From Fimbriosthenelais zetlandica (taxonomy: Eukaryota), in contig OZ365109.1 of NCBI GenBank assembly GCA_977030845.1, positions 53,630,001 through 53,694,000 of the forward strand: a DNA stretch of 64,000 nt. Direction: 5' to 3'. Under the pieces are notes generated by a model, which saw nothing but the letters and a program-made list of their open reading frames with translations, made no database searches and was not told where the DNA came from. Below, one piece after another: positions 24,501 through 60,775 of this stretch (the stretch's first letter is position 1; every line of letters starts with the position of its first letter). The position numbers and the translations under genes were made by a program.

Positions 24501-27500
24501 CTCTCCCATGTGCCAGCCACTGCGCTTCTGCAGGTCGGGTAGAGTGGGGACTGCTTCCAGATTCCTCCTGGCGCCTTAGTGACTGGCGCCTATCTGGAAG
24601 CACAGGCCAGGCGTCGATGGCGCCTATAGACATGGAAGTGTGCAGGAGGGGAGAGGGAGTGGGAGTGGGAGTGGGAGAAAGGGAGAGTATGGGTATGTGA
24701 TGCACTGGGACCTTGGCTACAGGCATCTATGCTTCCCCATATTAATCAGCGAAACCGATGTTGATTATTTTAGTGAACAATTGTAAACACTAACAATTAA
24801 AATACCATTGGTTAAATACCGGATTACTTAATAATTGATTGCTGAACTTTAGAAAGTCATTTCTTTTTGCACTGAATTCTACTACGTTGTTCTTGCATCC
24901 TTACAACCAATTGAATTACCAGGCTAGAAGCAGGATACAGGCCATTGCTGCCATTTTATTGTTGGCCATTTTCAGAGTATGACACTTGAAGAAGTTCTAT
25001 CAGTGCATATCGGGAGGCTAATCTGATTGTACTTGGCGTTTCAATTAGATGAAGTCAGATTTAGCTGATGGTTTGGGAATATGGTATCTGTCGGTCAATA
25101 TGAGGCCCCAGCTGTAGAGAATGGGTCCCACACTGGAGGTCAATACTGGGGGTCCTATTCCCCTGATTAAACAAACCCTTATGGACTTAACTCTTCCTCT
25201 AATTTAAAGCAAAGCTATTGTCTGTTCTCAGAATACAATCAGGTCATCTGCTACTCATAGATCGCATTTTCTGGGGCATCGGGCATCACGTGAATCAGAA
25301 TCCAAGTAGTTTTAATCCACTGAATTGCAATGAAATTTACTATATTTCCCGTTTATCTTTTGATACATTCTTTGGCATTAGCCAAGTACAATATTATTCA
25401 TCTTATGCATTATTAATGCTAACGAACAAGAACCCAAGACAAGAAAACACACCTTTGAATCAGGAGAAACATTTAGAAAGCATTATCTTGGATGGTTAAT
25501 AAATAATAAAATAGAGCAAGCGGTAAAGGAACTGACATAAGCCTGGCACAATTGTTCACTGTTTTTATAAAGCAGGGATACATTTGTTGACACTGAGACC
25601 TCTGATAGTGAACATCACCCTGTTATCTACAGCATTGATAAGGTCAGCCTGTCCTGGCTGACAGCAGTATGGAGTAAACACGGTAAACTAATGGGCTGGC
25701 AGCAGTAACAGCAGCAATCCCTCCCACAAAACAAAATGGCATTCCACGAACACTATCACCTAGGCCAAACCTGGGACATGAGTGAAGAATTATTATTTCC
25801 TCGATAGAAAATTATCAGAATCATCAGTGATTCTAGTGCGTAAAGATATATGGCCCATTGGAATATTGAAGTTGTATCGCACAACACACAGGCAAAATAT
25901 TAATGAATATTACATATCGTAACAATACATCACGCCGTAGTTTTTATTTTCATCGAAAAAATCTCAAAATTAATTGAGAGATCAACAAGATAAATAGGGT
26001 ACAAAATCAATTGCCATTATCTATCTGCCCATATCCTGATTCGATCTAACAATCCTGCATTCCATGAAGATGCAATAAAATGTAGGGTCTCTGGCACATA
26101 TTCCCCTCGTTGCATAACTTCAGCGAGCGCTCGTAGAAAATATCGTAGGAATTTTCCTGTGAATTTTTTTCCTACGAGACTTGGCCAGCGAGACCTCGCT
26201 GAAGTTAGGCAACAAAGGAGAATGCTCGGGTGGCTAATGTTTGTTAGTTCATTTTGATCTTTGAATGGTTCGTTCATGATTTTGAACTTAGTTCGGTCGT
26301 GATACATTTTGTTCTATATAATATTCTTTGTTCAGCCGTGCACGTGCATGATACATTGTGATCTTTGTTCAGCCGTGATACATTTGATCTGAGGTATGCT
26401 ACGGCATCAACGAAGGTGGTGGGAGAGGAGGAGAGGGTTGAAGAGAGGAAGCAGAGTTTCTGTTAGCATACTCGGCACACGCTATCTGCTGATTCAGCCC
26501 AAATGACAATTATCCCACATGAATGAGGAGGGGCAGCCTCAGAACTGCCTGCTCCATAAGAGCTCTTATATCTATAGACATGCCATATTCACATTGTAGG
26601 GAATCAATACAGTTATATTGGTATTAACAATCATCGTTTGCTCTGCCCTTCAAACAAGTGTATTAAATACTTGCAGGCTTGTTAGACGAGAGGGTCCCAA
26701 CCTCCTCTAGTGTTTGAACGATGTTTGGTAAGAGATTTTCAATATTCATGCCTCGCCTAAGAACCTATTTTTGTTAGCCATGTAGTTTGAATCTGTAGGC
26801 CAACTATTCTGAGAAGTATAAAATAATTTCAAATAACATACTTGCTTACAAGTAATTTGTAACCATTGGCACCTAATTAATTCTTGCGATAGATTTTGCA
26901 TTTACAAAAGTATTTATTATGAATATAACAAAAGTATAACGAATTTAACAAATGTATGATGAGCATTATGAAAAGTATATTATGCGTACATTTTAATTCC
27001 GATAAAATAAATTTTGTGCAATACAAGATACAAATAAAATGTATAGGTGCAAATCTGTATTTAATGATGTAGGGATGATACCTAAAGAGAGAACAGAGTA
27101 GGTACATAAAGAATTGGCATCAGATCATTAATTTGCTACTTTCAGCGTCTCTTCATTGTAGGAATGTGATCAAATAGCAACTGACAAGCATGACATAATC
27201 ACCTACATTTTATAATAATTGCCTAAGATTTGCAGGACGTTTTGTGCTAATTTTACTATCATCCTTACATGAAAACCTAATTAAATTTAGTTCAATCTTT
27301 CAAAGTTTGAACCGATTAGCATCAATCATTGCTGGAACAGGTATTTGGAAATTAAACACTTTTATTGATTACCTTTCATGCCAAAGCTTGTGGTCTAATG
27401 ACACACTGAAGGATGTTGGTTCAAAGTGTAATTTTGGGATTTATAAATTTGAGGTGCAGAATATTATTTTTTACATTAAATTTCTTCTTAATTAAAGCTA

Positions 27501-30500: not shown

Positions 30501-33500
30501 TTTCTGTATTTCAGTGCAAAACTATTTTCTCTTCAAAGGTAGAAATTCATAACATTTATAGTAAATGGTGAATTCAATAATAAGAAGGCCTAACGTTAGG
30601 ACACCACTCTTTTTCTGCTAATCACATAGATGTAGACATTAATTGATTAGCTGTTTAAGTTTTAAAATTCTTATAGTACCATCTCGCTTTCCCCAATCCA
30701 TGTAGAGATAGGTCCCTTAACAAAGCTTATGTTACTGCCACTTAGCTGATCCCGATCTCCTATAGCTACTTCAGAGAGAGCCAGACAAGCCTGTATGCCA
30801 TTAGACAGCGCAGCCACCGGGGAGAGCTCTCTTCCTGTTAGAGTAGTTCCATTAGTAACCACAAGGGGGCCAGCCCTGTCTGTGAGGCTTCACCGAGATT
30901 TGAGGGTATGAATATTAGGTGTGACAACCACATATCCTCCCTTCTCTGATGCCAGATCATGGCTCTATCCCTGATTGTCACATCCAGTACATTCGTTACA
31001 CCAACAACTTCGCGTGGGATGATATTCTAGTTTAGATCATTGCTTCCAAAGGTTCATTGCATTTTGGTAGATCATAACAAAAAAGTCATCTATGCCCATT
31101 GGATCATTAGAGTGATAAGCACTAATGCAATACAGAATAAATAGGGATGGCTTGTGACAAACGCTTCATCCATAAGTTTGAATATTGTCCCAGTGATCTG
31201 TGAAGCCTACAGATAATTACAATACACATTATAATGAAAGCCTTCATTATATACCTGATGGCGACCCCCAGCTGGTAAGAGAAACTTATTTGTATTCATG
31301 AGGCTATAAAGACCCTATCTAACCTCCAGCGGAAGGTGGAGGTCATTGGCCTGATATAGGAGCTAGGTATAATCAAGGCAAACCATGGCATTCATTAACT
31401 ATGGTGGAGAACTCAGCCATCTCCACTTTACTGCCTAAAATAAGGCAAAATCAGAGGGGAAAAGGCACTTAAGGTAAGGATTTATCTGTGGGAGGATTTT
31501 GGGTCATAATGAAAAGATCCCCGATGCACGTGGTCTGACATTTTCGCAATACATGTACATAGATTGAGGACCAACACCTGCGTTCATTCGAGATGAAAAT
31601 ATCGAGAATGGAAAAAAACTTATAAAACAAATCTTTAACTTACTTGAGATCTTCCAGCTCGTAATAGACATTGGTTGCTTGGTCCAGGACGTATATTTTC
31701 CTGGTGGGAGCTTCAAAGTAGACCATGGAGAGAGACTCCGGAAAGGAGCGCACAAAGAGCGCACGGACCGTGTCGATCGATGTGACCTCATTAGGTAGGA
31801 GCGCTCGCTTCGTCTCATTTCGGTGAATAAGGAACACCAAACCTGAAACAAGTGAAAAATTTGAAACATGAAAAAGTGTCCAAAAGTCAAAACCAAAAGT
31901 CCATAACTTGGCATAAGTTAATCGTCAAATAATATATATATAGACCTGTACATATCTAAAAGCTTATAAAGAATAAAATGGCTGGAATGAAAAGCTAAAG
32001 ATTCCCCTAGAAAATGTTATTTACGTTATTTAATGAGTGCCTGGGAATTCTTGAAGGGGGTTATCAATGGGAGTAGATGCTAGCGTTTTACAGTAGACGG
32101 CGCCAGCTGCGTGCAGTTTAAGAGCTCGTGTGAGCAGCTCAGAGCTACTCGAATAGAAGCAAGATCGTGGGTGGGAAAGCATTGCCCCACCTATATCTTC
32201 TTGATATACCAACCTTCAGATAGAAAATCTCTAGCTTCTGAAGGTTTCTTTGGAGGTTTCAATGTATTATATGGAGTCTTCCAAGAACTATAGATGATAA
32301 GCTCATCTTATGTGGAATCAACATAAACCAAGTAGGCCATTTCATAACAACCATTATACAACAACAATACCCAACATTGTCCAATTCCATCACTTGTATT
32401 AGTTTAGGGGAAATGCATTATAAACAGCTGGGTTCGTTAAAGAAAAACAGAAAACCCGAGGCTATCCATCTCCTGAAGGGGAGGCATTTAGGGAAGCTTG
32501 GGTCAGTGCAATTGGGGGAGTTAAGCCAGACCATCCCATAAAGATGTAGCAAAACACATCCATTCTGCATGCTCCAAGGAGGAACTCCCCTGATTGGCGC
32601 CATTAAAGTGGAAGCCTGGGAAAATATAAATTGCCCTTATAATTCCAGCCTGTGGGATAATGTTATGCCACTGGGATAGGGCAGTTGGTGCAACAATCAA
32701 GAAATATTAATGATCACATCAGATTTGGAAGGGTTTCTTAAGAAATCTGTGATTTAAATGAACTTGGTTTTAAGTACGGAACATGTAACCTGAAGGCTGA
32801 ATAATGATCTCAACCCTATAGCAATTTCAGCTGATATGAATTTTACATTGTTTCCTAAATTAAACCAGAAGATCTACATCATACTTGAAACTGAAAATTC
32901 TGTAAAGCTGGAATATGGATATGTAACCTCCATGCAACAAATTCGTTCGTTGCTTATAGTAAAATAGATTATTTTGACTTAAAACTAACCTCTCAAGTTA
33001 GATGTACATCCAAACCATGAATATCTGCGATGCCTGCCCATTGTGAACAGTGAAAAATGAGATTGAATACCAAATATTCAGTCTCAAATTATGAAGGAAA
33101 GTAGTGGATCATAGAAATGCAAACTCATCGCTAAATTTCTTCTTGGCCACGAAAATTGAAATGAGGTGTGATGAAGGCAATATTTGTTGCATTCTTTCGA
33201 GGTAATCCTTTTGGTTTCTGTCAGTACTTTCCCATGTTCCTCATTATTAGACTTTGATGAGAATATCTTGGATCGCAGCTCTGTATCCAGTAGAGGTCTG
33301 ATAAACCATCAAAGCCACATTTCTATAGAAGTCCAATCTTCCACTTTCTTCCACTGTTAAATCAATTCATCACATAATGTAAACGTCAGACACGGACTCC
33401 CTCTGTCACGCCTGGAATGGTGTTAATAAGTTTGTGATCCCTTCAAGAGTCACAGACGTACGATCTATTAGCCTACCCAGAACCCACCGTCAGGTAAAAG

Positions 33501-36500
33501 GCATTAAATCAAGCTACTTAAAAAGAGATATCTTGTGGGAGGTAGCGGAGAAGCGGCGGGAGGGGGTGGATCCCTGATTTTACCCACTCAGGGGTTTGTC
33601 CTGCAGGTCCTGTCCAGGTAAACTCATCTTCCCCGCGCGGATTTAACCATGGCAACGGAGGGAGGCTGACAGGTGTGAGAAAGAGGCGCCACGTGCGTCC
33701 GAAACACCCAGGGTCATCAATCGTACCTTCTCATGGGATGATGGTGGGGCGGGGGGTGAACTGGAGGGAGGAGGGGGTTGCCCTGACCCCCAAACAAACC
33801 CCAACTATTCTCCCAACCTAGTATAAACACATATACTATACACTGCACTATGTGTTATCAGTTAATGGATCTTCCTCCGTGCTAGCTTTGTTTTGGCTGG
33901 GCTTGAGTGTCCAAACCCAAAACCACATGAGAAGTTGGTCGTTTGGTTGCACATAAAGTCCCGTAGCGCAATGCAAAACTGTTTTTGTTTATGACAAGAG
34001 AAATATTTACCTGCTGCGATGTAAACTCCTTTGGTGTAATGTATAGAGTATGTATGCTGGTAGATACCAGACTTTGTGGTATTTGTGTGTTGGGGTAATT
34101 CTATGTCATGGGTGCTATATGTGCTCATCCCCACCCACCTTTCCACAGGTAATAAATAAAAGACCAGGTACTATGTATATATACACATGTAACACTATTC
34201 CCTCTGTAAATGTGGTCAAGGATGATGAAAGTAATACTATTTTGCAGAGCTGGGCGGGTATTGTATGGGACTCCCTATGCACAGTTAGGCCTCACAAAGA
34301 TGTATAGTCTCCATAGATTCCATCCAGTAGCTTTCTCGACATTGCTCCTAAATCGTCCATGTATCATCAAGGTTTTTATCTCATCTAGGTTTTTATTATT
34401 TATTTTTCGTTCTGGTCTCGTCTGGGCATCCGCCTCCTATCAATCATTGGGCCCGTGTGGCATCCAATACATGATATTAGATTTTTAATGTATAATAACC
34501 TGTATGTGTGTAACTATAGGACAGCTACAGTGGTACAGAGCTGGTGGGAGTATTGGTGGTTCTAAATAGAGATAAGATGATATAGCAATGTCATCGCTCC
34601 AATACTGATGTAAAGTAAAGTCCTCTTTAAAAAAATAATATCGAAAAGGCAATTTGAAGGACTACTGCAGTAGCATTACACAATGTAGAAGAAAAAAGAA
34701 AATTATTATAATTGTAGTTAATTTCTGCCAGGCAATCCACAGGAGGACATTTTACCTGTCACATGACAAACCGAAGGATCTTTTTTTGAAAAAAAATCTG
34801 TCCTTCAAACATTGGGATCAGATACGGCTAGAGGTAAACCGTCTTGCCGTGAACCTGTTGGAATATTTTTGGAGCGGCTGCCAGAAAAACGTTGTCAAGG
34901 TCAGGTTGTTCAGCTGGCAGGACACCAAAACCCAATCATGTGTATTTACGAGATTACTAAGAGGTGCTCTCAGGGAAAAACAGTATCCATGTGCACCTTA
35001 CTTTCATCTGTCAGAGGTCAGTCAGAGTTATTTCTCACATTAAAATAACTTTCCACCAAAAAGGTATTTATATAGAATATTCCACCAAACACTTTTCCAT
35101 CGAAAGTTGACTAAAATACTAGCTAAAGATTAAATCCAATTTTCCGGTGTATTGGTTACTATGATGTACATTTGACAAGGGTTAAGGAATCCCACAGAGG
35201 CATAATGTCACCTCTGTTGGACGCTATATATCATCCAGTAATCCGGAAGCATGCAGACGGAGAAGGACAAGTCCTTGACATAATTTCTAAAACGGTAAGC
35301 CGATGAAATAATCCTAAAGGTCGAAAGTCAATTTATGTACAGTCGAATGCACAAAAATCCAAATAATCGAAAAAGTAGGGAAAGTATGTATGAATCAGTG
35401 GGATAGAAGGGGGTAAGTTTTACCAGCCCCTCCTCCTCCTGTACTGACTCCTCCTGGGTCTAGGGGTACAGACATGACTCCTCCTCCAGTAAGTGAGGGA
35501 GTCCCTTCTCCTACTCCTGAGAGTGGCTACACACAGGTAACCCCAGGTGGTAGTGGGTACTGGATGAAAAGAGGGAGGAGAGGTGGGAGGGTGGGTGGTA
35601 GAGGGGCTCATCACAGGGCTTGTGGTCCGGAGAAGCACGTGGGGAGCCGGTGTGTGTAATGGGGGACGAAACCCTGCCATGCTATTATGAACTGTTGGAA
35701 GGGATACACATGGGTTATGAGCAGCTCATGGGAGCTATATTCCCAGTGTAGTAATATTAGATATTGTTGTACTCCATACTAAATATTGATCAACAGTTGG
35801 GGAGAAATCCGGTGGATAATGCATCATTATCAACCAAAAATATTCATGGAAAACACCAAGTAACTGCAGATAAAACTGTCTCAGATATCATATTGATTTA
35901 TTTAACTGATTTAAGGAATGAACTCTATAGTGAATCAGATCAAGGGAGGGAGTATTTCAGGTTTTAAGGTCAAGAATAAAATGTTTCTTATGTACCAATG
36001 GCATTCTCAATCTCGATTATCGATTATATAAAATTAATTAAATAATAAAATTCCATAAGCTAAATCATATGGAAAAGAGCTAGCTCGGCCATAGAAGGAC
36101 AAGTATCAATCATACTCAATCTCTATTTGCATTCAGCCATGATTGACATCCGTCACATTAGTTCATCAGAGATCACTCAGTTAAACGACCAATACCCATA
36201 CCCCAGCCTGACCCATCTCTACTGAGCTGGGAAATGAATAGTTGCTAATTATAGATAATAGACTTCAGTACTCAGAAGCAGTTTAGTATCTAGGTATGAG
36301 TTCTTCCTGATACTGAGCCTATTCTTTCCACCCAACTATAGAAAACGGATATCAATACAATGAGCTTGTGGAAGGATTAAAATATACAAAAAAAAGTTAA
36401 AACCTAGGCCTCCTAGACAAAGGGATTTAATAAGAAAAGAATTTGAAGCTCATGGTAGGATGTGTGACAATCATCAATGTAACAATGCTTGTAGCAATTC

Positions 36501-39500
36501 TGAAAAGATAAATTGCTATATGTCTGATAAATATATCATTTTACGACGCTTTGTAACAGCTTATCTGTGGAGATATGAACTCCACATGACCCAGAGATAC
36601 ATAGATATAATAATAAGTACCCTGACTGGTTGCCCCCTCCATCATCGGTCCTTCCCATACTCCTCCAGGGGAAAGGTCATACACTGGAGCATTAGAAAAG
36701 AAAACTCCACGTGCAGGGTAGACGGGTCATTTCATCTAATAGAGAAAACAAAAAATGGAGATGATAGAGAAGGGGAGAGCGGGAGAGAGAAAGTGGGAGA
36801 GAGAAGAGAGCTTCGGGGAGAAAGGGGATAGAGAAAGATGAGAGAGAAGAGTGAAGCTTAGAAAAAATTAGATAGGAGTGACGAAAGAGGAATGTAACAC
36901 CTCAGAGGGGGGATAACAGAAATATCTCATTTACCTCGAGCCTTTGTATACTCTACTGTAACAGGCCGACGCTTCCTGCAGCATCCGCAGCAACAACCAA
37001 GCAAGCACATGGCTCACACTCCCTTTAACAACTATTCCAGAAGTCTGATAATGTGGAAAGCATCACTGTTGGTATGATAGTCCATCGTTCTCATGATATG
37101 TATCACAACTCCAAGCTGGTACTCCAGTTAAGTGTGTTGGGAAACAGCGCTGTGTGAGTGGTTGCCTTCAGGCTCATTGTGTATGTATACTTGAGTATGG
37201 ACAAGACAACCCTCCACTGCTAATAGTACAAACTTAGCATCTCGTTCCGGGAGGTAGCAACTCACTTAAATCCTCGTTGCTAAGGAGGCTTGGATCTGTT
37301 GTTGCTATGGCGGTAACCAGGGTAACTAGGCACACACGTGAGACAGAAGGCACCACGTGGTCGTTGAGAAAAGGATATACCGAACTGCTACTGGTTGCTT
37401 TTTCCATCCAGTGTAGTTGTTATGTTTCATGAGTATTTATGCGGTTTTTATGAGTACAGGAAAGGATGGGTTTGGCTTTTTAAAGGACTGGTGGGAGGAG
37501 ATGGAAATAGCCAACCTACATGGACTGGGGAGTGATAAAAAGACAATATGAAGAATCGCTCTCGTCTGGGTTAACTGACACTGAGGATCAAAGTAACAGA
37601 TTGGTTCAAATGAGCAGCTCCAACTTTCACCCAGAAAATCTACCTCTAATTGGAGTTACACATTTCAGTGGTGCCCTCAAAAAACAAGGCTTTCCTCAAG
37701 TGAAGGTTGGGAGCTGGGAATATTATCAGTTCCAGATGTTAGTGTTTCTACCTATAGGTATAGAAGCACTTTCCTGCTTCTAACCCAAGCACAAACTTCT
37801 GATAGGACCTACAGGAGTTTTTGGTAAAGGTATGTTTATTCTCAAGAGGTGGAGGGTGATGACACTGGCATGTTTGTTTTTATTCCCGTCTGACCTTTAA
37901 TGTAAAAGAAATGGCAGAGACAGATGAGGGATGGAACATATGGTTCTCTTGATGGTTCTCTTCTATCCAACCTAGGTGGCGACTCTCAGGAAATGTTAAT
38001 GAACTGAGGAAAAATATCACAAAGAACTGAGAAGAATCAGAAGCTATCACTCAGAAGCATTGGTCTGCTAACGTCTTGTCACCCGAGTCAAATATCAAGA
38101 AGATCATTTGAAAGCTGTCATTTCTCCTTCACGGTCTAACATATAGTTTATCATATTTCACCTGAATATTTCAGGATGCATGAAAAATGTGTGACATGGC
38201 AGAATGTCAATATGGGGGGTCTCATACTCTGGGCAGTGTTACTGGAACGCATGTCACTGATAACACCAGGTTCGATTTCCAAACTCATTTTCCATTCAGC
38301 TTCGCACCAAAGCCCACAGCCGGTACACTCGAAGAATGTTACTATTTCCATGGCATGGAACTTTCTGTATACCTTCCTCTCTCCCTCCATCTCTCATTCC
38401 CTCTCATTCATTGGAATCAGTACATATCACTTAGGTGAATGGAAAGCTTCAAGAGGGCAAGGCATGACCAGGAAAAGTCAAGGAGCGCAGCAATAACTGA
38501 GAAAACACCATGGGAAAATGGTGCAAATACATTGACAGAGGCACACCAGACTAAAGTACTTAGCCACCCAGAAGCAAAGCATATGAGCAAATGCCCCTCA
38601 TCCTGGTCCAGTGCTTCTTTTATCTGAGTTTTAGAGGCAGGTATCTAATGTTACCACTGAACAGTTGCCTCCAGGCCAACCCTAAATCTGCACCTGGTGT
38701 TTTTCTGTCACCACAGATACCATATACTGTCTCTCATCCGCTTGTGGTTCCCCGTTGAAGCACCAGAGGGAGGCAGTGAGCGCGGGTGGTACGCTATAGA
38801 GATGGCTTAGAGGATGAAATACATCATCAGATATCAACTTCTCTCCGTGTAACTGAATCAAATAAGTGATATTGTTACTCCGGAGATGACAAATATCTTA
38901 GAACAGGTGATCGATGGGATAGGAATATTAAGAATCTGACCATATTTAGGGGAGGGATATGACCAGAATGGGACCTAATTATTCAAAGGTAATTCATAAA
39001 ATAAAAATTCCATTATATCAAGACAGTGAGATTGATCTGATGAAATGTTATCAGTTGTGCATAAACTTTGCATAAAATGATGACTATCAGAGAAGCATAA
39101 TTTCCCCTGAACCTAATATCTGTAACAATAAACGTCTGAGCAAATTATTACTCCTTCTACCTGTCACATCATGGTAACTTGAGGTAACCTCGAGACCCCA
39201 AACAAGTATTCAGGTGACGGTTTGACAACACTGGGAGGATTCAGTCCTGTCTCCAGTCGGGAACCAGCTAAAGAAGGCCTAAGTACTTATTGAATGTCAT
39301 CAGAATGTTATTAAAACGGCTGAATTTCCATTTCCAAATACATTTTGGTGGTTGCATGATGACATTGTTCTAAAGAGAATCCTCTCAATCGGTATCTATG
39401 GCCTCAAGTGTTATAACATGAACAATTGCTCAGGAAATGGCGAGGAATCTGTCAGAACCTCGAGACAAATTCAACAAGAACAATTAGATAATTAGTTTAA

Positions 39501-42490
39501 AGATTTCCAAGCAGGCATTTTATAGAAGTAATTAGTGATCAATATCCTCAAGGAAACAATTTATTCCCAATTGTTTCAGAATATGAATCAAAGAGAGATG
39601 TGGGTTCCCCGTTCACAGGTACAAATTCCAGGCCAAAAATGTTCCTTTTGTCCGTTGCTATGGCAACCACAATGAGAGAGGCGCCCTCTCAGATTAGCAT
39701 TGATTTCCGTTCATGAACGTAAACGGCCAAAGACATTAGATGGGTTTAACAAAGGAAATACGGAGGGAAATTGTGATAAATTGACTGAAGGTTGTGCTCC
39801 ACAATTTCCTTAAGTATTTCAAGATTGAGAGTTGAGAGACCAAAGACAGTGAGAGTATTTTGAGCTATAATCATCATTCAAGTAATTTTTCTGAGCATTG
39901 TCATTGATATAGACCAAAGTTAATCGAGAACAAGCGTGACAGAGAGGGAACTGTAGTGGTTAAGAAAAGCGAAGACTACTACTGCGTGCCACGTTTTGTT
40001 GGTATAATAATGATGCAAAGGGAGGGTACACAAATCAAGTAATAGTTTTGAGTAATAGTTGTTCAACAGTATGTATTGATGTTAATCTTAGATAGATAAA
40101 AATTAATTTTTATAGATCAGTACAGGATAAGGGATTTATAGGACAGTATAATATTTTAAGAATCTCTCCTGTCTTTGCATGTTTTCTTCTTGATATGTCT
40201 TGAAAAGAATCCCTTAAAAGGAAGCAAAACATCATGGGTGTAGGACCTCTGGTCTCTTTTAGAGAGCAGTCATTCATAAGGAAGATCTATGGTAGGTCTC
40301 CATTTAGAACATGTCCTATATAGTACCTTAACCCTAAACACCACAGGTCCATGTTTGAAAAGACAGGCAATTTATCTTCTAGTACAGCTGGTATTGGACG
40401 GCGGTTTTGAGTTCTCAAAGGCCAAACTGTTGAGCTGATGCTGATCAATTTAATACTTCTACCATTGATCTAAAATATAGTGGACATTAAATCTGACACC
40501 AATATGAACGAACAGTCATTCAGCTTGCCATGAGATAGAAACTTTGACCAACATTCATTTTAGTGAATCCTGCATCACAGAATTTCAATCATAATGTCAG
40601 AAAGTTTTTTCACATAAGCCATGACATACCAAGGAGGAAGGCATCATAATAAGTTGGATCAAGCATGACCGAGGCAGGCTACTCATCTCATCCTCAGGGG
40701 AAATGGCAATTAAGATCTGACCACAAAAGATTAAGCACAAACCTGATGTATTTATGCCATTAAGCTTTCCATGTCAATGAGCTTTCATTAAGCTTACCAT
40801 GTCCCTGCGGTTAGTGAATAGCCTTGAAAATGTTAACAAGCTGCCATAAATATCAAAGCAGCCTGTCAACACAGGCACTACAGGTCCCCTCCACAAGGTG
40901 TTGACGCTTATGAAGGTTCATTAAAATTTAAATAAAATACCAATCTATTAATAATGGCCAATATGTCCTATAATTATAGGTATAATAATATAACGATAGG
41001 ACAAATTACAGACTAATTAATTCATTATTAAAACGAATTCTGTGGCATATATTGAATATTAGAGTCAATTCTCAGGCAGAAAGTAGTATTTTGCCACGAG
41101 GATCTATAGAGTGCTTTTCATTCCATTACATGCAGACGATGAAGTTCAAAAGCACAAAATACAAAGCTTGCTTTATTCATCCCGTGGGAAATTACATACC
41201 ATACTAATTAGTGCTTAACTGGATCAATAAACCCCGTATTACGCGGTAAAGAGGTAAGGATTTTCAATGTTAAACAATGCACTGGAACCCAAAGAGGAAA
41301 GATTAGGGTTTGAAATCTTACTGTAAATGGGTTAAAATTTGCTGCCATGATGCCTGATGAATTTGATGTACCTTCAAATCTTTACAATATGTATTCAGGC
41401 CGTTTTTTTCTCGAATGAAACACTTCTATATGACATTGAGGAAAGACTGTCTATGACCAGAATATTTCAAACCATATAAGCATAGGCTAAGCCATGTCTA
41501 AGGAAGTGCAATGAGGACTGCAATCTAAATACAGTTGTCAATCCAATCTGACAGAGGAAATCCGGGTCAGTCAGGCTCTCAATATGGCAGTACTGGCCTA
41601 TGTTTGAGGGGAATATCCTGAATCTTTATGCGTTTTTGTAATATCTAAATCAAGGCCAAGGGTTCTGAGGGCAGAAAGAGAAAGCTATGTTCATGAGCAA
41701 ATATCAAGATTCCATTTCAAATCATCGTTTCCTGAGTTCGGACAAGGCCTTTTTTTAATGGTTTCTCAGCTGAACTTGTTTATGTGACAATTCTCAGCGG
41801 TTCCAGATTTACATAGCTTTCACTAATCCCAAGGCTAAACTGAAACAAATTCTTCTTGCTGATCAGCTCAAAGAAATCCCTTGAAATAAGAGATTTAGCT
41901 TCTATTCCCTCAGCTGCGCGCTGGGTTCAGAACAGCATCCAATTTGTGTGGACTGCTGTGTTTCCTCTAATCCAGAGCTTAGAGAAATAACTCAAGTCTT
42001 CACACCGCTGTTTAAAGCCTTTCTCAAACTCCTTCCTCTTCACAAAATCTGTTCTATTCTCTATGGCGAACTTCTGGGAATTCATTCCAAGCCAGCCCGA
42101 GTTCCTTCCAGTCCATCCTATTTCCAAACTTTTCAAATCAAAAACTACAAATGGAATATATATACTAGAATCGCTATGATGAATTTCCAACCTAAGTAGT
42201 ATAATATTAGTCCATTGACTCAGGCTGGAGTGTAGGTCATCAATCACGGACACCAATCCATCCATCTATAAAGTGATCAGTGCTAGAGAAAGAAGCACAG
42301 AAAGAAAGGCAATCTACTTACCTAATGGCTTTTCAAGCGTCTTGTTCGGGCTTCTTACGACGGGTAAGCTTGACCTAAGTCGTCCCCCTCGCAGGAAGCC
42401 CCCTTCCCCCATCATCTCGTCTTCTGACCCCTCTCCAACCTCGGGCGGACCCGGGTGTCCAGCAGCCTTCTTCTGCTCCTCTGCTCGCCT
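1..42490 (-). CDS. SRCIN1/KIAA1217-like: Spliced core CDS of an SRCIN1/KIAA1217 (sickle tail)/CG32809-family actin- and Src-regulatory scaffold; 13 exons, 3' end outside the window
   Basis: join on minus strand: 42490-42322, 31842-31644, 19448-19265, 12989-12794, 9565-9400, 8958-8810, 3832-3642, 3401-3283, 2924-2794, 2410-2335, 1444-1361, 896-752, 525-1. Total 2334 nt = 778 codons, no stop, all GT-AG with matched phases. Recognised family motifs: RSSLPVVRSPNKTLEKPLGLVFL..ETKRALLPNEVTSIDTVRALFVRSFP, YYELEDLKDVKDRAVLKIY, RSGSATP..RMDKMEAQLANL, EMEVVVREEK, RCKKLTGTLYTLKRLASVQ (family assignment from recall, not a database search). Confidence 0.93.
752..896 (-). CDS. Core exon 12: (R)LASVQDEKNPQP...LLENIQAMVPDHQARVQSLE
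   Basis: Acceptor ttttgttatcag, donor gtaatt; phase 2 to 0; family-like PDH..R motif. Confidence 0.92.
1361..1444 (-). CDS. Core exon 11: (K)YIQLEAQRLDTSLKRCKKLTGTLYTLK(R)
   Basis: Acceptor attaatag, donor gtgagg; phase 2 to 2; conserved RCKKLTGTL motif. Absent from the ORF track. Confidence 0.92.
2335..2410 (-). CDS. Core exon 10: (G)KYPLLTEQMKSVMAGEMEVVVREE(K)
   Basis: Acceptor tctctttccag, donor gtgagt; phase 1 to 2; EMEVVVREEK motif. Confidence 0.92.
2794..2924 (-). CDS. Core exon 9: DLESAVEELRSDVLNKKCRVQNTEVESMALALSNISKALADLK
   Basis: Acceptor ttaatttttcag, donor gtgagt; phase 2 to 1; coiled-coil, family-like. Confidence 0.92.
3283..3401 (-). CDS. Core exon 8: EVLSTVPGAQDVPVRASRARVDHSMKVYNDDTKRVEQDL
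   Basis: Acceptor tcttttcag, donor gtaagt; phase 0 to 2. Confidence 0.9.
3642..3832 (-). CDS. Core exon 7: LSDVSSATPTPQP...KELKSELRHLRRMQLANAESMRETFQQTFLKIK
   Basis: Acceptor tgtttcag, donor gtgagt; phase 1 to 0; coiled-coil. Confidence 0.92.
8810..8958 (-). CDS. Core exon 6: RNRMDKMEAQLANLAAWVQTAVVQREPGG...SDTSAKS
   Basis: Tandem acceptor ttttttag/cag, donor gtcagt; phase 2 to 1; corresponds to the family ME.QxAxL motif. Confidence 0.9.
9400..9565 (-). CDS. Core exon 5: (M)GIIPNQRHSVAYIPEGG...DYYEGSSRSGSATPTASDQEA(S)
   Basis: Acceptor cttcctctttcag, donor gtgagt; phase 1 to 2; RSGSATP motif. Confidence 0.88.
11104..11155 (-). other. Candidate non-coding alternative first exon, GC-rich, ending ...ggcggcgcacA|gtgagt (5' end uncertain)
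   Basis: No internal ATG; consensus donor at 11103-11098; its last A plus TG of exon 9565 forms an in-frame AUG. Confidence 0.5.
11156..11183 (-). promoter_or_regulatory. Paired CRE sites (TGACGTCA 11161-11168, TGACGTAA 11176-11183) followed by a TATAT element on the minus strand
   Basis: Read directly from sequence; immediately upstream of the candidate exon ending at 11104. Confidence 0.6.
12794..12989 (-). CDS. Core exon 4: AKAASLPAQSNFIYQQEMAQYG...SSPSRTHPIPQ (Pro/Ser/Gln-rich linker)
   Basis: Acceptor gtctttgcag, donor gtgagt; phase 0 to 1 bridges its neighbours; GC-rich relative to the intron. Confidence 0.82.
13283..13298. repeat. (AG)8 microsatellite
   Basis: Direct read. Confidence 0.85.
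15228..15360. repeat. Degenerate minisatellite, core GCAGYTYGR..CAR, 21-nt spacing at 15277/15298/15319 with looser copies at 15228, 15246, 15344
   Basis: gcagcttggagccagt / gcagctcgggtccagt / gcagtttgagaccaat / gcagcttggattcagt. Confidence 0.6.
19265..19448 (-). CDS. Core exon 3: (K)DVKDRAVLKIYETEAPSVRSPSRSP...PPRNFDQ
   Basis: Acceptor ctttctttgcag, donor gtaagt; phase 2 to 0; continues the domain from exon 2. Confidence 0.92.
23570..23652 (-). CDS. Candidate alternative first coding exon MDELNRLYVYKARPGRDQMLPKIAYYR(R)
   Basis: Strong Kozak accATGG, upstream in-frame stop, donor aag|gtaagg in phase 2 matching exon 19448. Confidence 0.58.
24648..24683 (+). repeat. G-rich (GGGAGT)n repeat, G-quadruplex-forming motif
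   Basis: Six runs of three or more G. Confidence 0.6.
26299..26385. repeat. Local duplication: tctttgttcagccgtg twice (26325, 26362) with tgatacatt three times
   Basis: Direct read. Confidence 0.7.
31644..31842 (-). CDS. Core exon 2: (G)LVFLIHRNETKRALLPNEVTSIDTVRALFVRSFPESLSMVYFEAPTRKIYVLDQATNVYYELEDL(K); AIP3-like domain
   Basis: Acceptor ttgtttcag, donor gtaagt; phase 1 to 2; the most conserved block of the family. Confidence 0.95.
33643..33656. promoter_or_regulatory. RFX X-box, one mismatch (TTAACCATGGCAAC), in a GC-rich island with E-box CACGTG at 33690-33695
   Basis: Match to GTNRCC(N0-3)RGYAAC except the first base. Confidence 0.4.
36935..37010 (-). CDS. Candidate alternative first coding exon MCLLGCCCGCCRKRRPVTVEYTKAR(G)
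   Basis: In-frame tga then gccATG; donor gag|gtaaat in phase 1 matching exon 31842; Cys cluster plus basic patch. Confidence 0.62.
37276..37359. promoter_or_regulatory. RFX/E-box cluster: half-sites GTTGCTAAGG and GTTGCTATGG, X-box GTAACCAGGGTAAC (37313-37326), CACGTG at 37335 and 37354
   Basis: Read from sequence; about 270-350 nt upstream of the MCLLG ATG on the minus strand. Confidence 0.55.
39654..39667. promoter_or_regulatory. RFX X-box GTTGCTATGGCAAC
   Basis: Canonical 14-mer X-box. Confidence 0.55.
42322..42490 (-). CDS. Core exon 1: RRAEEQKKAAGHPGPPEVGEGSEDEMMGEGGFLRGGRLRSSLPVVRSPNKTLEKPL(G)
   Basis: Acceptor ggtttccag, donor gtaagt; phase 0 to 1; RSSLPVVR motif. Confidence 0.93.
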
Positions 42491-42884
42491 CTGGAAACCA
42501 ATTGAAATTCTCACTTTAAACTGATAATCTCAGTGAAATATATAGATTGTATAGATTATGGTAAATAAATAGATGTAGAATTAATAATTAGGGCTTGTTA
42601 GTTACTGACACATTTGGAAATGGCTAAATTATGAAGAATCATAAACAAAATAGCCTGGTGATAGATCTATACCTATTTTGTCAATATTGTACATATAAAT
42701 TAGCAATCCAAACTGAACGGTAATAATTAAGGATTTTAGTTAGAAAATATTGACAATGTCATCTGAAAGAATACCGAAGCGGCAATTGGGAAGAAACAAT
42801 TCAAATGTTATGAGACACTTCCTGGATGAAGTTCCTACATTATTGTAGAATATACAATAGGCCGTCAATCCATGGATATCCAAG

Positions 42885-42924
42885 GTTGTTTACACCAGAG
42901 AGACGTTGTTTACACCAGAGAGAC
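42885..42924. repeat. Perfect 20-bp tandem duplication gttgtttacaccagagagac x2, each copy with a Forkhead core TGTTTAC
   Basis: Direct read. Confidence 0.85.
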
Positions 42925-44749
42925 TGCACCTCCAGGGACCGGATGTATAGCAGATCTGTAACAAGCCAATCTGCAGGGGTTTGAAAACGGCTGGACAAGA
43001 CTGGCGCCCTGAGCAAAAAGATGATCTACAAGAGACTCAATCTTCCCAGATATTTGCAAGTGTTGGCACAAGAGACTTCTCAGCACTGCTATATATATGA
43101 CTCAGAGTGATGGACTATAAGGAAGCATCTAGGCAACAGCAACTTGAATGTCATGTATGTGCAGGAGGTCATAACCACAGGATTCGATTGATATACTAAA
43201 TATCAAAATATGCAGTTTTTGATTTTCAATAATTTAGGCTACCTCATAAATATTTAATAAATCTTCATGACATTACAGATGGGACAAGTTCAGCTGAAAT
43301 AAAATAAATTAGTTTTCAGATGGACTATGAATTTTAGCTGAATTATGAGCAGAGCCACTCTCACGCGAGTCCTGCATTATATCATATATTGCCTATTCCA
43401 GCCGAATCATCCGCACCTCACCTTCCACAGGGTGTGAAGCACGTGGTGGGGAGGACATCAATGTACATGGCTGGCATTCACAGGAAATTATTTCCCACCC
43501 ACTTGCTGGCTGATATAACATACTCATAAATAGGGAGTTCTGTCTGGTCTACTGTATGTATAAATACAGTTGGCGCCAGATTATAGAACCCATCAGCATT
43601 TTATCCTTATCGGAAAAATATTAGATTTTGCAGTTGTCCATAACTATCCCAAAAAAACGCATGATGAATCTGTATCTAGATCGAAGATAAGTTCCTCGGG
43701 AACACGATCTCTTCGAATGAGCCATATGATTATCAGAGTTGCGCGAAGAAACTGGAGAAACAGTACACCCTGTCAGCTCTCCATTTCCCAGCCTTCTCGC
43801 AAGGCAGCAATGATATTTTTACATGTCTCACACAAAATACAGTGCGAGAATATGGCTGGCCATTTAGATGACCATCAGCATAGGGTACATGGGAAATGTG
43901 GCTAGCCTTTGAATATACCCAGTTAACATTACTGGTCTGGTTCTGTCTATGCCACCCTCAGGGGACTGGCAAGTATTAATTGGTAGAGAATGTGAATGTT
44001 TGCCAAATAAGATGAATCTCCCATCTAGAAAATCTACCCCTTCATATTTAACACGTACTATAGAGAGCTTTATAGTGCCCTAAGCCTCCCGTGCTAGATG
44101 AAGGCGGCACATCTCTCTGATGCCATGAAAAGGGATGAAATAGGATGGGAGGGATTTCCCTTTGGAGGAAAGGGTAATACCCTGGTAGTATTTCCACATC
44201 TGTCGCGTTATAAATACAGTGGAATATAACTTAATGATCACTTCATTAACCCGACCATCTCATTCTGCGACGGTGAGGACCAAATAGTTCCAGCAGGACT
44301 AACGCCTATAGGTCTGTACGTTACCAAAATAGTTCAATCATGGTCGTTTTAGTGAGAGTCCACTGTATATCCCTCCTCTGGACATTAGGTTTAATGTATC
44401 AGTACCTAAACCATCACTAGATCTACGATTCATGTGGCACGTTGGACTATTGCTAAAGCCATCTCGATGTTCTCTTGGACGTGTAAATGCCAGGCATTTA
44501 ACAGGTCACGCGAGGGAACAGAGGACTGCTGCATTAAATCAGCTGTATTGAATAGCGTTATTTCAGCAGGAAAGGACTCTGTCCATTGCTTATAGGCCTG
44601 GTGGATAGCCAATCATTCTGAATAGACCAGCCTATATATACATTTATAAATTTCCTGATATAAGACAGTGGTATTTATTTTGATTTACTAGGCCCCTAAG
44701 ACCATCAGTTGAACATGCCACATCTGAATATATTTGAGTGAAATAACCT

Positions 44750-60740: not shown

Positions 60741-60775
60741 CTCAATCGCAGATCAAAGGAAATGCATCCACCCAT
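60741..60775 (-). CDS. Candidate initiating coding segment MGGCISFDLRL(R), inside exon 60793-60741
   Basis: Long pyrimidine tract tttatctcttcttgcctttcatctcatctcgttttcactcctggcag, ttcATGG start, donor gag|gtaatg in phase 2; MGxxxS myristoylation consensus with Cys4. Confidence 0.6.

What the first reader, a model, noticed from the sequence alone, without database searches (positions are those of the whole stretch)
36935..37010. Cysteine-string N-terminus MCLLGCCCGCCRKRR on an alternative first exon
Seen: 6 Cys in the first 11 residues followed by RKRR, with a stop two codons upstream, gccATG and a phase-1 donor that fuses straight onto the AIP3-like domain. Established: Cys-string plus basic motifs are multiply palmitoylated in CSP/DNAJC5 and RGS-RZ proteins, and GAP43 starts MLCC. 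Inference: a reversible, myristate-independent membrane anchor placed directly on the conserved domain. The exon is too short for the ORF track.
Basis: partly seen in the sequence, partly recalled or inferred. Interest (0 to 1): 0.75.

Follow-up and report, generated by a model that had tools for sequence, protein, structure and literature searches.

The report
Candidate palmitoylated start exon, unproven
Inside an intron of a probable annelid worm's SRCIN1/sickle-tail-type scaffold gene lies a 76-base mini-exon that would give the protein a new start made of six cysteines plus four basic residues, a classic fat-attachment membrane anchor. The sequence is real and too unlikely to be pure chance, but no RNA or cross-species evidence shows that it is used.

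Summary
On the minus strand, 37010-36935 reads ATG-MCLLGCCCGCCRKRRPVTVEYTKAR plus one G, then GTAAAT. A TGA lies two codons upstream. The phase-1 end fits the phase-1 acceptor at 31842, whose exon matches Pfam AIP3 positions 1-59.

The gene is the single-copy protostome orthologue of SRCIN1/p140Cap and KIAA1217/sickle tail (CG32809/AGAP005037 family). The mini-exon sits in the 10.4 kb intron between the canonical exon (42490-42322, also phase 1) and the AIP3 exon.

In favour:
- It is unique in the genome and not a called tandem repeat.
- Its donor resembles other donors of this gene.
- It keeps the conserved junction glycine.
- I estimate that chance would give the full set of features 0.01 times or less per genome.
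- Orthologues elsewhere carry cysteine-cluster or myristoylation-type alternative starts, and one transcript has a short polybasic first exon joined directly to the AIP3 exon.

Against:
- No sequencing run was listed, so splicing could not be tested.
- No counterpart exists in seven distant relatives.
- TGY-rich runs are common, and two other in-phase ATG mini-ORFs lie in the same intron.

Verdict: a plausible alternative first exon encoding an S-palmitoylated anchor, confidence about 0.5. It is a known kind of device in a new place, of modest interest.

The parts
36935..37010 (-). Candidate alternative first coding exon (coding part): MCLLGCCCGCCRKRRPVTVEYTKAR plus the first base (G) of a Gly codon. 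The 5' UTR and transcription start are unknown.
   Evidence: Read directly and translated. Unique in the genome. Not called as a tandem repeat. CpG observed/expected is 0.84 against a window mean of 0.46, based on only 4 CpGs.
36929..36934 (-). Splice donor GTAAAT after GAG, phase 1.
   Evidence: Other donors read in this gene include GTAATT (twice), GTAATG and GTGAGG, so G at +5 is not required here.
37014..37016 (-). In-frame TGA two codons upstream of the ATG. It rules out an in-frame coding extension from upstream.
31643..31842 (-). First AIP3-domain exon. Acceptor cag|GT in phase 1, donor AAG|GTAAGT.
   Evidence: Pfam AIP3 positions 1-59. 62-81% identical over this exon to the best-matching orthologue proteins listed. 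Single copy in the genome.
42322..42490 (-). Canonical upstream exon (...GGFLRGGRLRSSLPVVRSPNKTLEKPL plus G), donor TAG|GTAAGT, also phase 1. It is the normal splice partner of the AIP3 exon in homologues.
   Evidence: Homologues read ...RSSLPVVRTPSKTLERPLG|LVFL....
32990..33041 (-). Rival splice-compatible mini-ORF MGRHRRYSWFGCTSNLR(G), donor GAG|GTTAGT, 1.15 kb upstream of the AIP3 exon.
   Evidence: It has the same length, a basic cluster and a Trp like the first exon of transcript L010, but the similarity is not significant (shuffle p 0.07).
60741..60775 (-). Far-upstream exon starting MGGCISFDLRL with a GT donor. This is the subject of another note and is shown here only as the myristoylation-type alternative start.
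   Evidence: note s1-207698.

Best explanation
The 76 nt are the coding part of an alternative first exon, driven by a promoter inside the 10.4 kb intron of the worm's single SRCIN1/sickle-tail-type gene. It splices to the first AIP3 exon at 31842.

The product would lack everything encoded upstream, including the MGGCIS start and the RSSLPVVR...KPLG exon. It would begin MCLLGCCCGCCRKRR, 26 residues before the AIP3 domain.

Inferred mechanism: Leu3, Leu4 and the RKRR stretch give a weak, transient affinity for acidic membranes. Membrane-bound zDHHC enzymes then S-acylate several of the six cysteines, which traps the protein on the membrane. Thioesterases can release it again. Alternative promoters would thus choose between differently anchored forms of the same scaffold.

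Shown: the sequence, the reading phase, the domain junction, the rarity, and the precedent in the family. Inferred: transcription, splicing, translation and acylation.
For: - Exact reading frame and phase. The junction recreates the Gly that precedes LVFL in nearly all full-length homologues examined.
- The donor GAG|GTAAAT lies within the range of this gene's other donors.
- The exon is unique in the genome and is not a called repeat.
- Rarity. About 1,100 distinct TGY-run loci are extrapolated from 44 distinct loci counted by hand in the first 17.9 Mb of the list, and only this one has both an ATG five codons upstream and four K/R codons after it. The only other all-basic case (C10:52902466) is a convincing transmembrane exon with a juxtamembrane CCCCCCRKKK. 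My rough expectation for the whole combination, in a sense-strand intron with an in-phase donor, is 0.001-0.01 per genome.
- Family precedent for Cys-cluster starts: insects MCS[KR]CS[ER]CC, conserved between the ant Temnothorax and the beetles Diorhabda and Phyllotreta; bivalves M[HY]RGC[IV][FL]CKMRDA[IL]LGCMG.
- Family precedent for MG starts: Lineus, Ruditapes, Brevipalpus and this window's MGGCIS.
- Transcript-like contig L010 (P0166, 78.8% identical in the AIP3 exon) starts MATKKRRRWSFFDHRTQG|LVFL, with an in-frame stop upstream. A short basic first exon joined straight to the AIP3 exon therefore exists in a relative. A Capitella gene model does the same with MTPPRNADPELDIYFG|.
- Vertebrate p140Cap is drawn as N-terminally myristoylated (PMC7904710).
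- A zDHHC gene is reported in this genome (note s1-214051; not checked by me).
Against: - There is no expression evidence. No sequencing run was listed for the exon or for the AIP3 exon, so read laying could not be used. No protein from this species was among those listed by the protein searches.
- No counterpart was found in the equivalent intron or upstream flank of Tubulanus, Capitella, Paralvinella, an Olavius-like oligochaete, or three short contigs. Within the reach of these data the exon is lineage-specific or absent.
- TGY-rich runs that read as poly-Cys are common, and a relative shows a clearly accidental one (MSLTLLTKSNWCCCYCCC, from (TGT)n) 230 nt upstream of its AIP3 exon.
- Splice compatibility alone is weak evidence: the same intron holds two other ATG mini-ORFs with in-phase donors that score as well.
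- There is no TATA-like element or CpG peak upstream, and several upstream ATGs would fall in the 5' UTR if transcription starts more than about 65 nt away.
- The rarity estimate is post hoc.
Confidence: 0.5

Rival explanations
1. It is a chance intronic open frame. A degenerate TGY-rich run, the kind of sequence that is the antisense of CAG/CAA repeats, happens to follow an ATG and precede purine-rich codons and a GT. It is neither transcribed as an exon nor translated.
For: - TGY runs are abundant: 3354 matches genome-wide, 36 with an ATG at this spacing.
- Four MRN codons after the run are no commoner than in the reversed control (3 against 5).
- A second Cys run lies on the same strand at about 25731 without any exon features.
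- An accidental M...CCCYCCC frame sits beside the same exon in a relative.
- Three in-phase ATG mini-ORFs occur in this one intron.
- There is no conservation in seven relatives, no RNA evidence and no promoter signal.
Against: The full combination (ATG, 6 Cys in 11, four consecutive K/R, 25 open codons, an in-phase donor of the gene's usual type, a preserved junction Gly, the sense strand, the intron directly before the conserved domain) has an estimated chance expectation of 0.01 or less per genome. The exon is not a called microsatellite. The family repeatedly uses lipid-anchor-type alternative starts.
Confidence: 0.3
2. The region is transcribed but not as proposed. One option is an internal or poison cassette exon using an AG just upstream (aatag| or ttaaag|). 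This would interrupt the upstream reading frame or shift the frame into a stop in the AIP3 exon. The other option is an unspliced 27-residue micropeptide, MCLLGCCCGCCRKRRPVTVEYTKARGK.
For: - AG dinucleotides with a moderately pyrimidine-rich stretch precede the ATG.
- If joined to the phase-1 canonical exon at the ttaaag| site, the frame reads GSVSHVLAWLLLRMLQEASACYSRVYKGS and ends in phase 2, which runs into TGA nine codons into the AIP3 exon (my own reading).
- The unspliced frame closes two codons after the donor.
Against: No data support any transcription here. The candidate acceptors are weak. A stand-alone 27-residue peptide has no homologue: the pattern scan of metagenome contigs for CCCGCCRKRR gave seven hits, none of them next to an AIP3 exon and none shown to be related.
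Confidence: 0.12
3. The true internal first exon of this intron is the other mini-ORF at 33041-32990 (MGRHRRYSWFGCTSNLR-G), and the cysteine exon is a bystander.
For: It has the same length (17 residues plus Gly), a basic cluster and a Trp at the same position as the transcript-supported first exon of L010/P0166. Its donor score of 3.84 slightly exceeds that of the Cys exon.
Against: The similarity is not significant (shuffle p 0.07), and the Cys exon's own right-aligned match to the same peptide is similar (p 0.04). The DNA alignment is unconvincing. The GTTAGT donor has an unusual T at +3. The two exons are not mutually exclusive.
Confidence: 0.08

Closest known systems
Exclusively S-palmitoylated N-termini followed by basic residues (GAP-43 MLCCMRRTKQ; calcium-channel beta2a MQCCGLVHRRR, itself one of several N-terminal splice variants)
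   Same: Met followed within a few residues by clustered Cys, flanking hydrophobic residues and a run of Arg/Lys. There is no Gly2, so no myristate. The anchor would be supplied by an alternative 5' exon, as in beta2a. The motifs are from my own knowledge. GAP-43 and the weak-affinity-then-trapping model are in PMC3010063. The beta2a palmitoylation papers are listed in PMC4042065.
   Different: There are six cysteines rather than two. There is no sequence homology. Acylation and expression are untested here.
Cysteine-string regions of CSP/DNAJC5 and RGS-RZ proteins (RGS17/19/20)
   Different: Those strings are internal and longer (CSP has about 14 Cys) and sit in unrelated proteins with J or RGS domains. 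This one is at the very N-terminus, starting at residue 2. It is an analogy only, not family membership.
Vertebrate SRCIN1/p140Cap and KIAA1217/sickle tail; protostome CG32809/AGAP005037 proteins
   Same: The host gene is their orthologue: AIP3 domain, the conserved ...SLPVVR...PLG|LVFL junction, and the downstream coiled-coil exons. p140Cap is drawn with an N-terminal myristate (PMC7904710). Orthologues carry MG... and Cys-cluster alternative starts.
   Different: None of the roughly 460 family proteins retrieved (not all isoforms in the databases) has a Cys string joined directly to the AIP3 exon. The insect and bivalve Cys-cluster exons lie 160-300 residues further upstream and are not similar in sequence.
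PSD-95 alpha/beta and GRIP1a/b: isoforms that differ by a palmitoylated alternative N-terminus
   Same: The same logic of a scaffold protein switching membrane attachment through alternative 5' exons (my own knowledge, not checked here).
   Different: Unrelated proteins; two cysteines (PSD-95) or one (GRIP1b); experimentally proven.

Membership tests
SRCIN1 / KIAA1217 (sickle tail) / CG32809-AGAP005037 family (host gene) | AIP3 domain (Pfam PF03915) | tested here: met
   Exon 31842-31643 matches profile positions 1-59 (E 1.9e-7). Exon 2908-2759 matches positions 213-255 (E 3.5e-4). The exon ORF at 913-716 matches positions 321-358, but only weakly (E 0.069). All full-length homologues carry PF03915.
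SRCIN1 / KIAA1217 (sickle tail) / CG32809-AGAP005037 family (host gene) | Collinear similarity to family members across several exons, including the conserved exon before the AIP3 domain | tested here: met
   tblastn of P0166, P0151, P0074 and P0170 against the window gives 8-10 collinear exon matches at about 50-55% identity. The canonical exon reads ...RSSLPVVRSPNKTLEKPL-G.
Alternative first exon of this gene | Transcription start upstream and RNA junction 36935^31842 | not testable with these tools
   No run was listed for either exon, so read laying had no input. No protein or transcript from this species was among those listed by the searches.
Alternative first exon of this gene | ATG in a usable context, open frame, and a donor in the phase of the downstream acceptor | tested here: met
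   gccATGt with G at -3; 25 open codons; GAG|GTAAAT in phase 1 against the phase-1 acceptor; junction codon GGT, Gly.
Alternative first exon of this gene | Conservation of the exon in related species | tested here: not met
   There is no M-start Cys-plus-basic mini-exon with an in-phase donor upstream of the AIP3 exon in L002 (Tubulanus), L011 (Capitella), L012 (Paralvinella), L006-L009 (Olavius-like), L003, L022 or L023-25. All of these are distant (65-80% identity in the AIP3 exon) and several contigs cover less than 1.2 kb upstream, so the test is weak.
S-palmitoylated N-terminal anchors (GAP-43 / beta2a type) | Cytosol-facing Cys cluster near the N-terminus with adjacent hydrophobic and basic residues and no signal peptide or transmembrane segment | tested here: met
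   MCLLGCCCGCCRKRR: Cys at 2, 6, 7, 8, 10, 11; Leu at 3, 4; RKRR at 12-15. The 11-residue hydrophobic stretch is too short for a membrane span. This is a compositional criterion only; there is no consensus motif for zDHHC enzymes.
S-palmitoylated N-terminal anchors (GAP-43 / beta2a type) | Thioester-linked acyl groups on the cysteines and acylation-dependent membrane binding | not testable with these tools
   This needs acyl-biotin exchange or acyl-RAC, metabolic labelling, Cys-to-Ser mutants and 2-bromopalmitate.
Cysteine-string protein (CSP/DNAJC5) or RGS-RZ family | J domain (CSP) or RGS domain next to the cysteine string | tested here: not met
   The exon is followed by an AIP3 domain. In the Pfam scan of eight ORFs of this gene (three of them AIP3 exons), none matched a J or RGS domain. 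The resemblance is functional only.

The most novel reading that the evidence does not exclude
The SRCIN1/sickle-tail scaffold family has a general, so far undescribed design principle in protostomes. A battery of alternative promoters supplies interchangeable lipid anchors: myristoyl-plus-palmitoyl MG(x)C starts, Cys-cluster starts and polybasic starts. These would send the same AIP3/coiled-coil scaffold to different membrane domains. In this worm the extreme version places a six-cysteine anchor 26 residues from the AIP3 domain. Because the start is Met-Cys, the isoform could additionally be subject to the Cys-2 Arg/N-degron route known for RGS4/5/16. Acylation and oxygen- or NO-dependent degradation would then compete at the same residue.
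Probability: 0.12. Interest if true: 0.55.

Novelty: new member of a known kind. Interest (0 to 1): 0.33.

Why it matters
If the exon is used, one gene would produce at least two differently anchored scaffolds: a Src-like MGGCIS form and a myristate-independent, multiply palmitoylated form that lacks the whole N-terminal region. That would give a simple handle on how p140Cap/sickle-tail-type proteins are positioned at membranes.

These proteins regulate Src/Csk signalling and are synaptic components in vertebrates. The fly orthologue CG32809 was recently listed in the acetylcholine-receptor proximity proteome (PMC12054790).

The survey across species is of independent use. Lipid-anchor-like alternative starts recur in insects, mites, bivalves, nemerteans and this worm, and the invertebrate genes are almost unstudied: only five papers in the searched library mention CG32809.

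If the exon is not used, it is a useful example of how TGY-rich simple sequence can imitate a palmitoylation motif.

Tried and rejected
- RNA evidence: the look-up of sequencing runs on the exon plus its upstream flank (kind rna) and on the AIP3 exon (kind any) listed no runs. Read laying therefore had no run ids and was not used.
- This species' own proteins: a representative search with the AIP3 exon and three word-index searches (P0074 region 1-650, the AIP3 exon, P0166) listed no protein from this species. The best AIP3-exon match in the word-index search was 80%; by tblastn, contig L010 is 78.8%. ORF fragments of 116-505 residues were never candidates in the word-index searches.
- Homologue N-termini: about 460 family proteins were screened, including 97 extra cluster members. 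None has a Cys string directly before the AIP3 exon.
- Genomic loci of relatives were scanned for Cys-rich frames and by tblastn with the 25-residue peptide. Nothing convincing was found. The Capitella frame MTSDPCASCNCCQC just after the canonical donor, and the (TGT)n frame in L023, lack usable in-phase donors after the cysteines. One contig (P0264) had no DNA available, and P0151 was not on record.
- The metagenome pattern scan for CCCGCCRKRR gave 7 hits, mostly high-GC contigs and none near an AIP3 exon.
- Homology of either mini-exon to the first exon of transcript L010 is not significant (p 0.04 and 0.07). The DNA alignment was uninformative.
- Paralogue comparison: the gene is single-copy.
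- Repeat or mobile-element origin of the exon is rejected. Only the CT-rich stretch at 36758-36854 in the downstream intron recurs in the genome, and TRF calls no repeat in the exon.
- No Rfam family matches in 31000-43000.
- The CpG profile shows no promoter-like peak near the exon and none at the MGGCIS exon either, so it is uninformative.
- Literature: no paper describes palmitoylation of p140Cap or a Cys-rich isoform of CG32809.
- Structure and complex prediction were not used, because a 26-residue lipid-anchor peptide would not give a meaningful model.
Full report
**1. What is in the sequence**

Read on the minus strand, window 37010-36935 is ATG TGC TTG CTT GGT TGT TGC TGC GGA TGC TGC AGG AAG CGT CGG CCT GTT ACA GTA GAG TAT ACA AAG GCT CGA G, followed by GTAAAT.
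- This gives MCLLGCCCGCCRKRRPVTVEYTKAR plus one base, so the exon ends in phase 1.
- Cysteines are at residues 2, 6, 7, 8, 10 and 11, and RKRR is at 12-15.
- The context is TGA GCC ATG: an in-frame stop two codons upstream and G at -3.
- At 31842 the acceptor ttgtttcag|GT opens an exon that, in phase 1, reads (G)LVFLIHRNETKRALLPNEVTSIDTVRALFVRSFPESLSMVYFEAPTRKIYVLDQATNVYYELEDLK and ends AAG|GTAAGT at 31643.
- That exon matches Pfam AIP3 (PF03915) profile positions 1-59.

**2. The gene**

Collinear tblastn matches of family proteins mark further exons down to the low end of the window.
- The best relatives are a JGI metatranscriptome protein (P0166), nemertean proteins (Lineus, Tubulanus) and Capitella, at about 50-55% identity.
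- Named relatives are 'coiled-coil domain-containing protein CG32809/AGAP005037', 'sickle tail protein', 'SRC kinase signaling inhibitor 1' and 'SNIP'. The gene is therefore the protostome orthologue of SRCIN1/p140Cap and KIAA1217.
- It is single-copy in this 447 Mb genome.
- In homologues the residues before the AIP3 exon are ...RSSLPVVRTPSKTLERPLG. The window has this exon at 42490-42322 (...RLRSSLPVVRSPNKTLEKPL, then G|GTAAGT), also in phase 1.
- The cysteine mini-exon therefore lies inside the 10.4 kb intron between the canonical exon and the AIP3 exon. It can only be coding as a first coding exon, because of the upstream TGA.

**3. Is it more than chance?**

Splice compatibility alone is not significant.
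- The intron holds 199 combinations of an ATG with an in-phase GT before a stop.
- Three different ATGs have donors scoring 3.7 or more on a consensus matrix: 34128, 33041 and this one.

A cysteine run alone is not rare either.
- The pattern TGY TGY TGY NNN TGY TGY has 3354 matches in the genome, against 880 for the reversed control.
- I counted 44 distinct loci by hand in the first 17.9 Mb of that list, which extrapolates to about 1,100 distinct loci. Most are TGY simple sequence, the antisense of CAG/CAA runs.
- 36 matches have an ATG exactly five codons upstream (control 6).
- A relative shows an obviously accidental MSLTLLTKSNWCCCYCCC, from (TGT)n, next to its AIP3 exon.

The combination, however, is rare.
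- Only three loci in the genome have the Cys pattern followed by four MRN codons (control 5).
- Only two of these are all K/R: this one, and a convincing transmembrane exon ...LLLLILICACCCCCCRKKKGEDQ....
- Only this locus also has the ATG.
- Multiplying by rough factors for lying in a sense-strand intron and for having an in-phase donor of acceptable quality before the next stop, I estimate 0.001-0.01 such cases per genome by chance. This figure is post hoc and approximate.

Other relevant points:
- The exon is unique in the genome.
- It is not called by Tandem Repeats Finder.
- It ends in G, so the conserved junction glycine is kept.
- Its donor GTAAAT is of the same loose type (GTAATT, GTAATG, GTGAGG) seen at other exons of this gene.

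**4. Evidence from relatives**

No sequencing run was listed for the exon or for the AIP3 exon, so splicing could not be tested. No protein from this species was among those listed by the protein searches.

I fetched genomic loci from these relatives:
- Tubulanus (L002)
- Capitella (L011)
- Paralvinella (L012)
- an Olavius-like oligochaete from gutless-worm metagenomes (my identification of the JGI samples, not checked) (L006-L009)
- three short contigs (L003, L022, L023-25)

None has an M-start cysteine-plus-basic mini-exon with a usable in-phase donor upstream of the AIP3 exon. These species are distant (65-80% identity even in the AIP3 exon) and several contigs are short.

**5. Family context**

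Screening about 460 family proteins, including many RefSeq isoforms, showed that alternative N-termini of lipid-anchor type are a recurring theme.
- MG starts: Lineus MGHTYSS, Ruditapes MGQISSS, the mite Brevipalpus MGLGCALIKS, and this window's MGGCIS exon at 60775-60741.
- Cysteine-cluster starts:
  - MCSRCSRCC(K/R) in the beetles Diorhabda and Phyllotreta and MCSKCSECC in the ant Temnothorax. Both are followed by a conserved EEEWN motif, so this is a conserved exon.
  - M[HY]RGC[IV][FL]CKMRDA[IL]LGCMG in the bivalves Ruditapes and Dreissena.
- None of these is joined directly to the AIP3 exon.
- Short first exons joined directly to the AIP3 exon do exist:
  - The 4.5 kb contig L010 reads as spliced mRNA: one uninterrupted 921-codon frame for a gene that is split into many exons in this window. 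It starts MATKKRRRWSFFDHRTQG|LVFLIYKNETKR, with an in-frame stop upstream.
  - A Capitella gene model starts MTPPRNADPELDIYFG| with a G|GTGAGC donor.
- The polybasic cluster of L010 lies at the same distance from the junction as RKRR here. However, neither this exon nor the rival mini-ORF at 33041-32990 (MGRHRRYSWFGCTSNLR-G) is significantly similar to it (p 0.04 and 0.07).

**6. Mechanism**

If expressed, the N-terminus has the features of proteins that are lipidated only by S-palmitoylation: no Gly2, hydrophobic residues (Leu3, Leu4), clustered cysteines and an adjacent basic stretch.
- The accepted model is a weak intrinsic membrane affinity followed by kinetic trapping through zDHHC-mediated acylation, reversible by thioesterases (PMC3010063).
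- Vertebrate p140Cap is depicted with an N-terminal myristate (PMC7904710). A lipid anchor on this scaffold is therefore not new in itself.
- A myristate-independent cysteine string placed 26 residues from the AIP3 domain, on an isoform lacking the whole N-terminal region, would be a new variant.
- All of this is inference. No step from transcription to acylation has been observed.

**7. Comparison and novelty**

The closest functional analogues are GAP-43, the beta2a calcium-channel subunit, and the palmitoylated alternative N-termini of PSD-95 alpha and GRIP1b (my own knowledge; beta2a references are listed in PMC4042065).
- CSP and RGS-RZ cysteine strings are analogies only. Their defining domains are absent.
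- No paper in the searched library describes palmitoylation of p140Cap or a cysteine-rich isoform of CG32809. CG32809 itself is nearly unstudied, although it appears in a cholinergic postsynaptic proteome.

**8. Verdict**

- My odds: real palmitoyl-anchor first exon about 0.5; accidental intronic frame about 0.3; transcribed but used differently about 0.12; bystander to the 33041 exon about 0.08.
- It would be a new member of a well-known kind of device, and interest is modest (0.33).

Noticed in passing
window 32990-33041 (-): A second splice-compatible mini-ORF, MGRHRRYSWFGCTSNLR(G), with donor GAG|GTTAGT, lies 1.15 kb upstream of the AIP3 exon. It has the same length, a basic cluster and a Trp position like the first exon of the transcript-like contig L010 (MATKKRRRWSFFDHRTQG). 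The similarity is not significant (p 0.07).
   Followed up: partly
window about 25690-25735 (-): The only other stretch in the window with 6 or more Cys in 11 residues (FCGRDCCCYCCQPIS) is on the gene's strand, in the intron after the AIP3 exon. It has no ATG and no evident splice sites, and is probably TGY simple sequence.
   Followed up: partly
L020 (G000:C10:52901466-52903494), minus strand around 52902466-52902494: A convincing coding exon of a membrane protein: a hydrophobic span, ...GGLAAFLLLLILICA, followed by CCCCCCRKKKGEDQTDKHPN... and a GTAAGT donor. This is a juxtamembrane cysteine string of the palmitoylated type. The gene was not identified.
   Followed up: partly
proteins P0203, P0215, P0257, P0243, P0098 (insects); P0345, P0351, P0165 (bivalves): Conserved Cys-cluster alternative N-termini occur in orthologues: MCS[KR]CS[ER]CC...EEEWN in beetles and ants, and M[HY]RGC[IV][FL]CKMRDA[IL]LGCMG in bivalves. 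I found no description of them in the papers searched. They are candidate acylation (or metal-binding) starts.
   Followed up: partly
L010:691-747 (+), JGI sample 3300021313: A metatranscriptome contig from a related lophotrochozoan encodes a 921-residue isoform whose first 17 residues (MATKKRRRWSFFDHRTQ) are polybasic and join directly to the AIP3 exon. It has a 690-nt 5' UTR containing upstream ATGs.
   Followed up: partly
L023:401-481, L024:190-270, L025:73-153 (+): A relative has a (TGT)n-derived frame, MSLTLLTKSNWCCCYCCCNAWHCCLF*, 230 nt upstream of its AIP3 exon with no usable in-phase donor after the cysteines. Capitella has MTSDPCASCNCCQCPMSSRK* 24 nt after its canonical donor (L011:8240-8302). 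Three annelid loci thus have Cys-rich M-frames in this intron. By my rough estimate this is not more than chance.
   Followed up: partly
window 36758-36854: A CT/GA-rich low-complexity stretch in the intron just downstream of the mini-exon matches dozens of places in the genome at 71-89% identity. It is a dispersed simple-sequence family and is not part of the exon.
   Followed up: partly
L011:5888-8250 and 10001-16555: The Capitella assembly annotates the orthologue as two separate genes. The upstream model ends in the intron just past the canonical ...TSLPLIRSPNRSMERPIG exon, so the published 949-residue protein is either an internal-promoter isoform or a split model.
   Followed up: no
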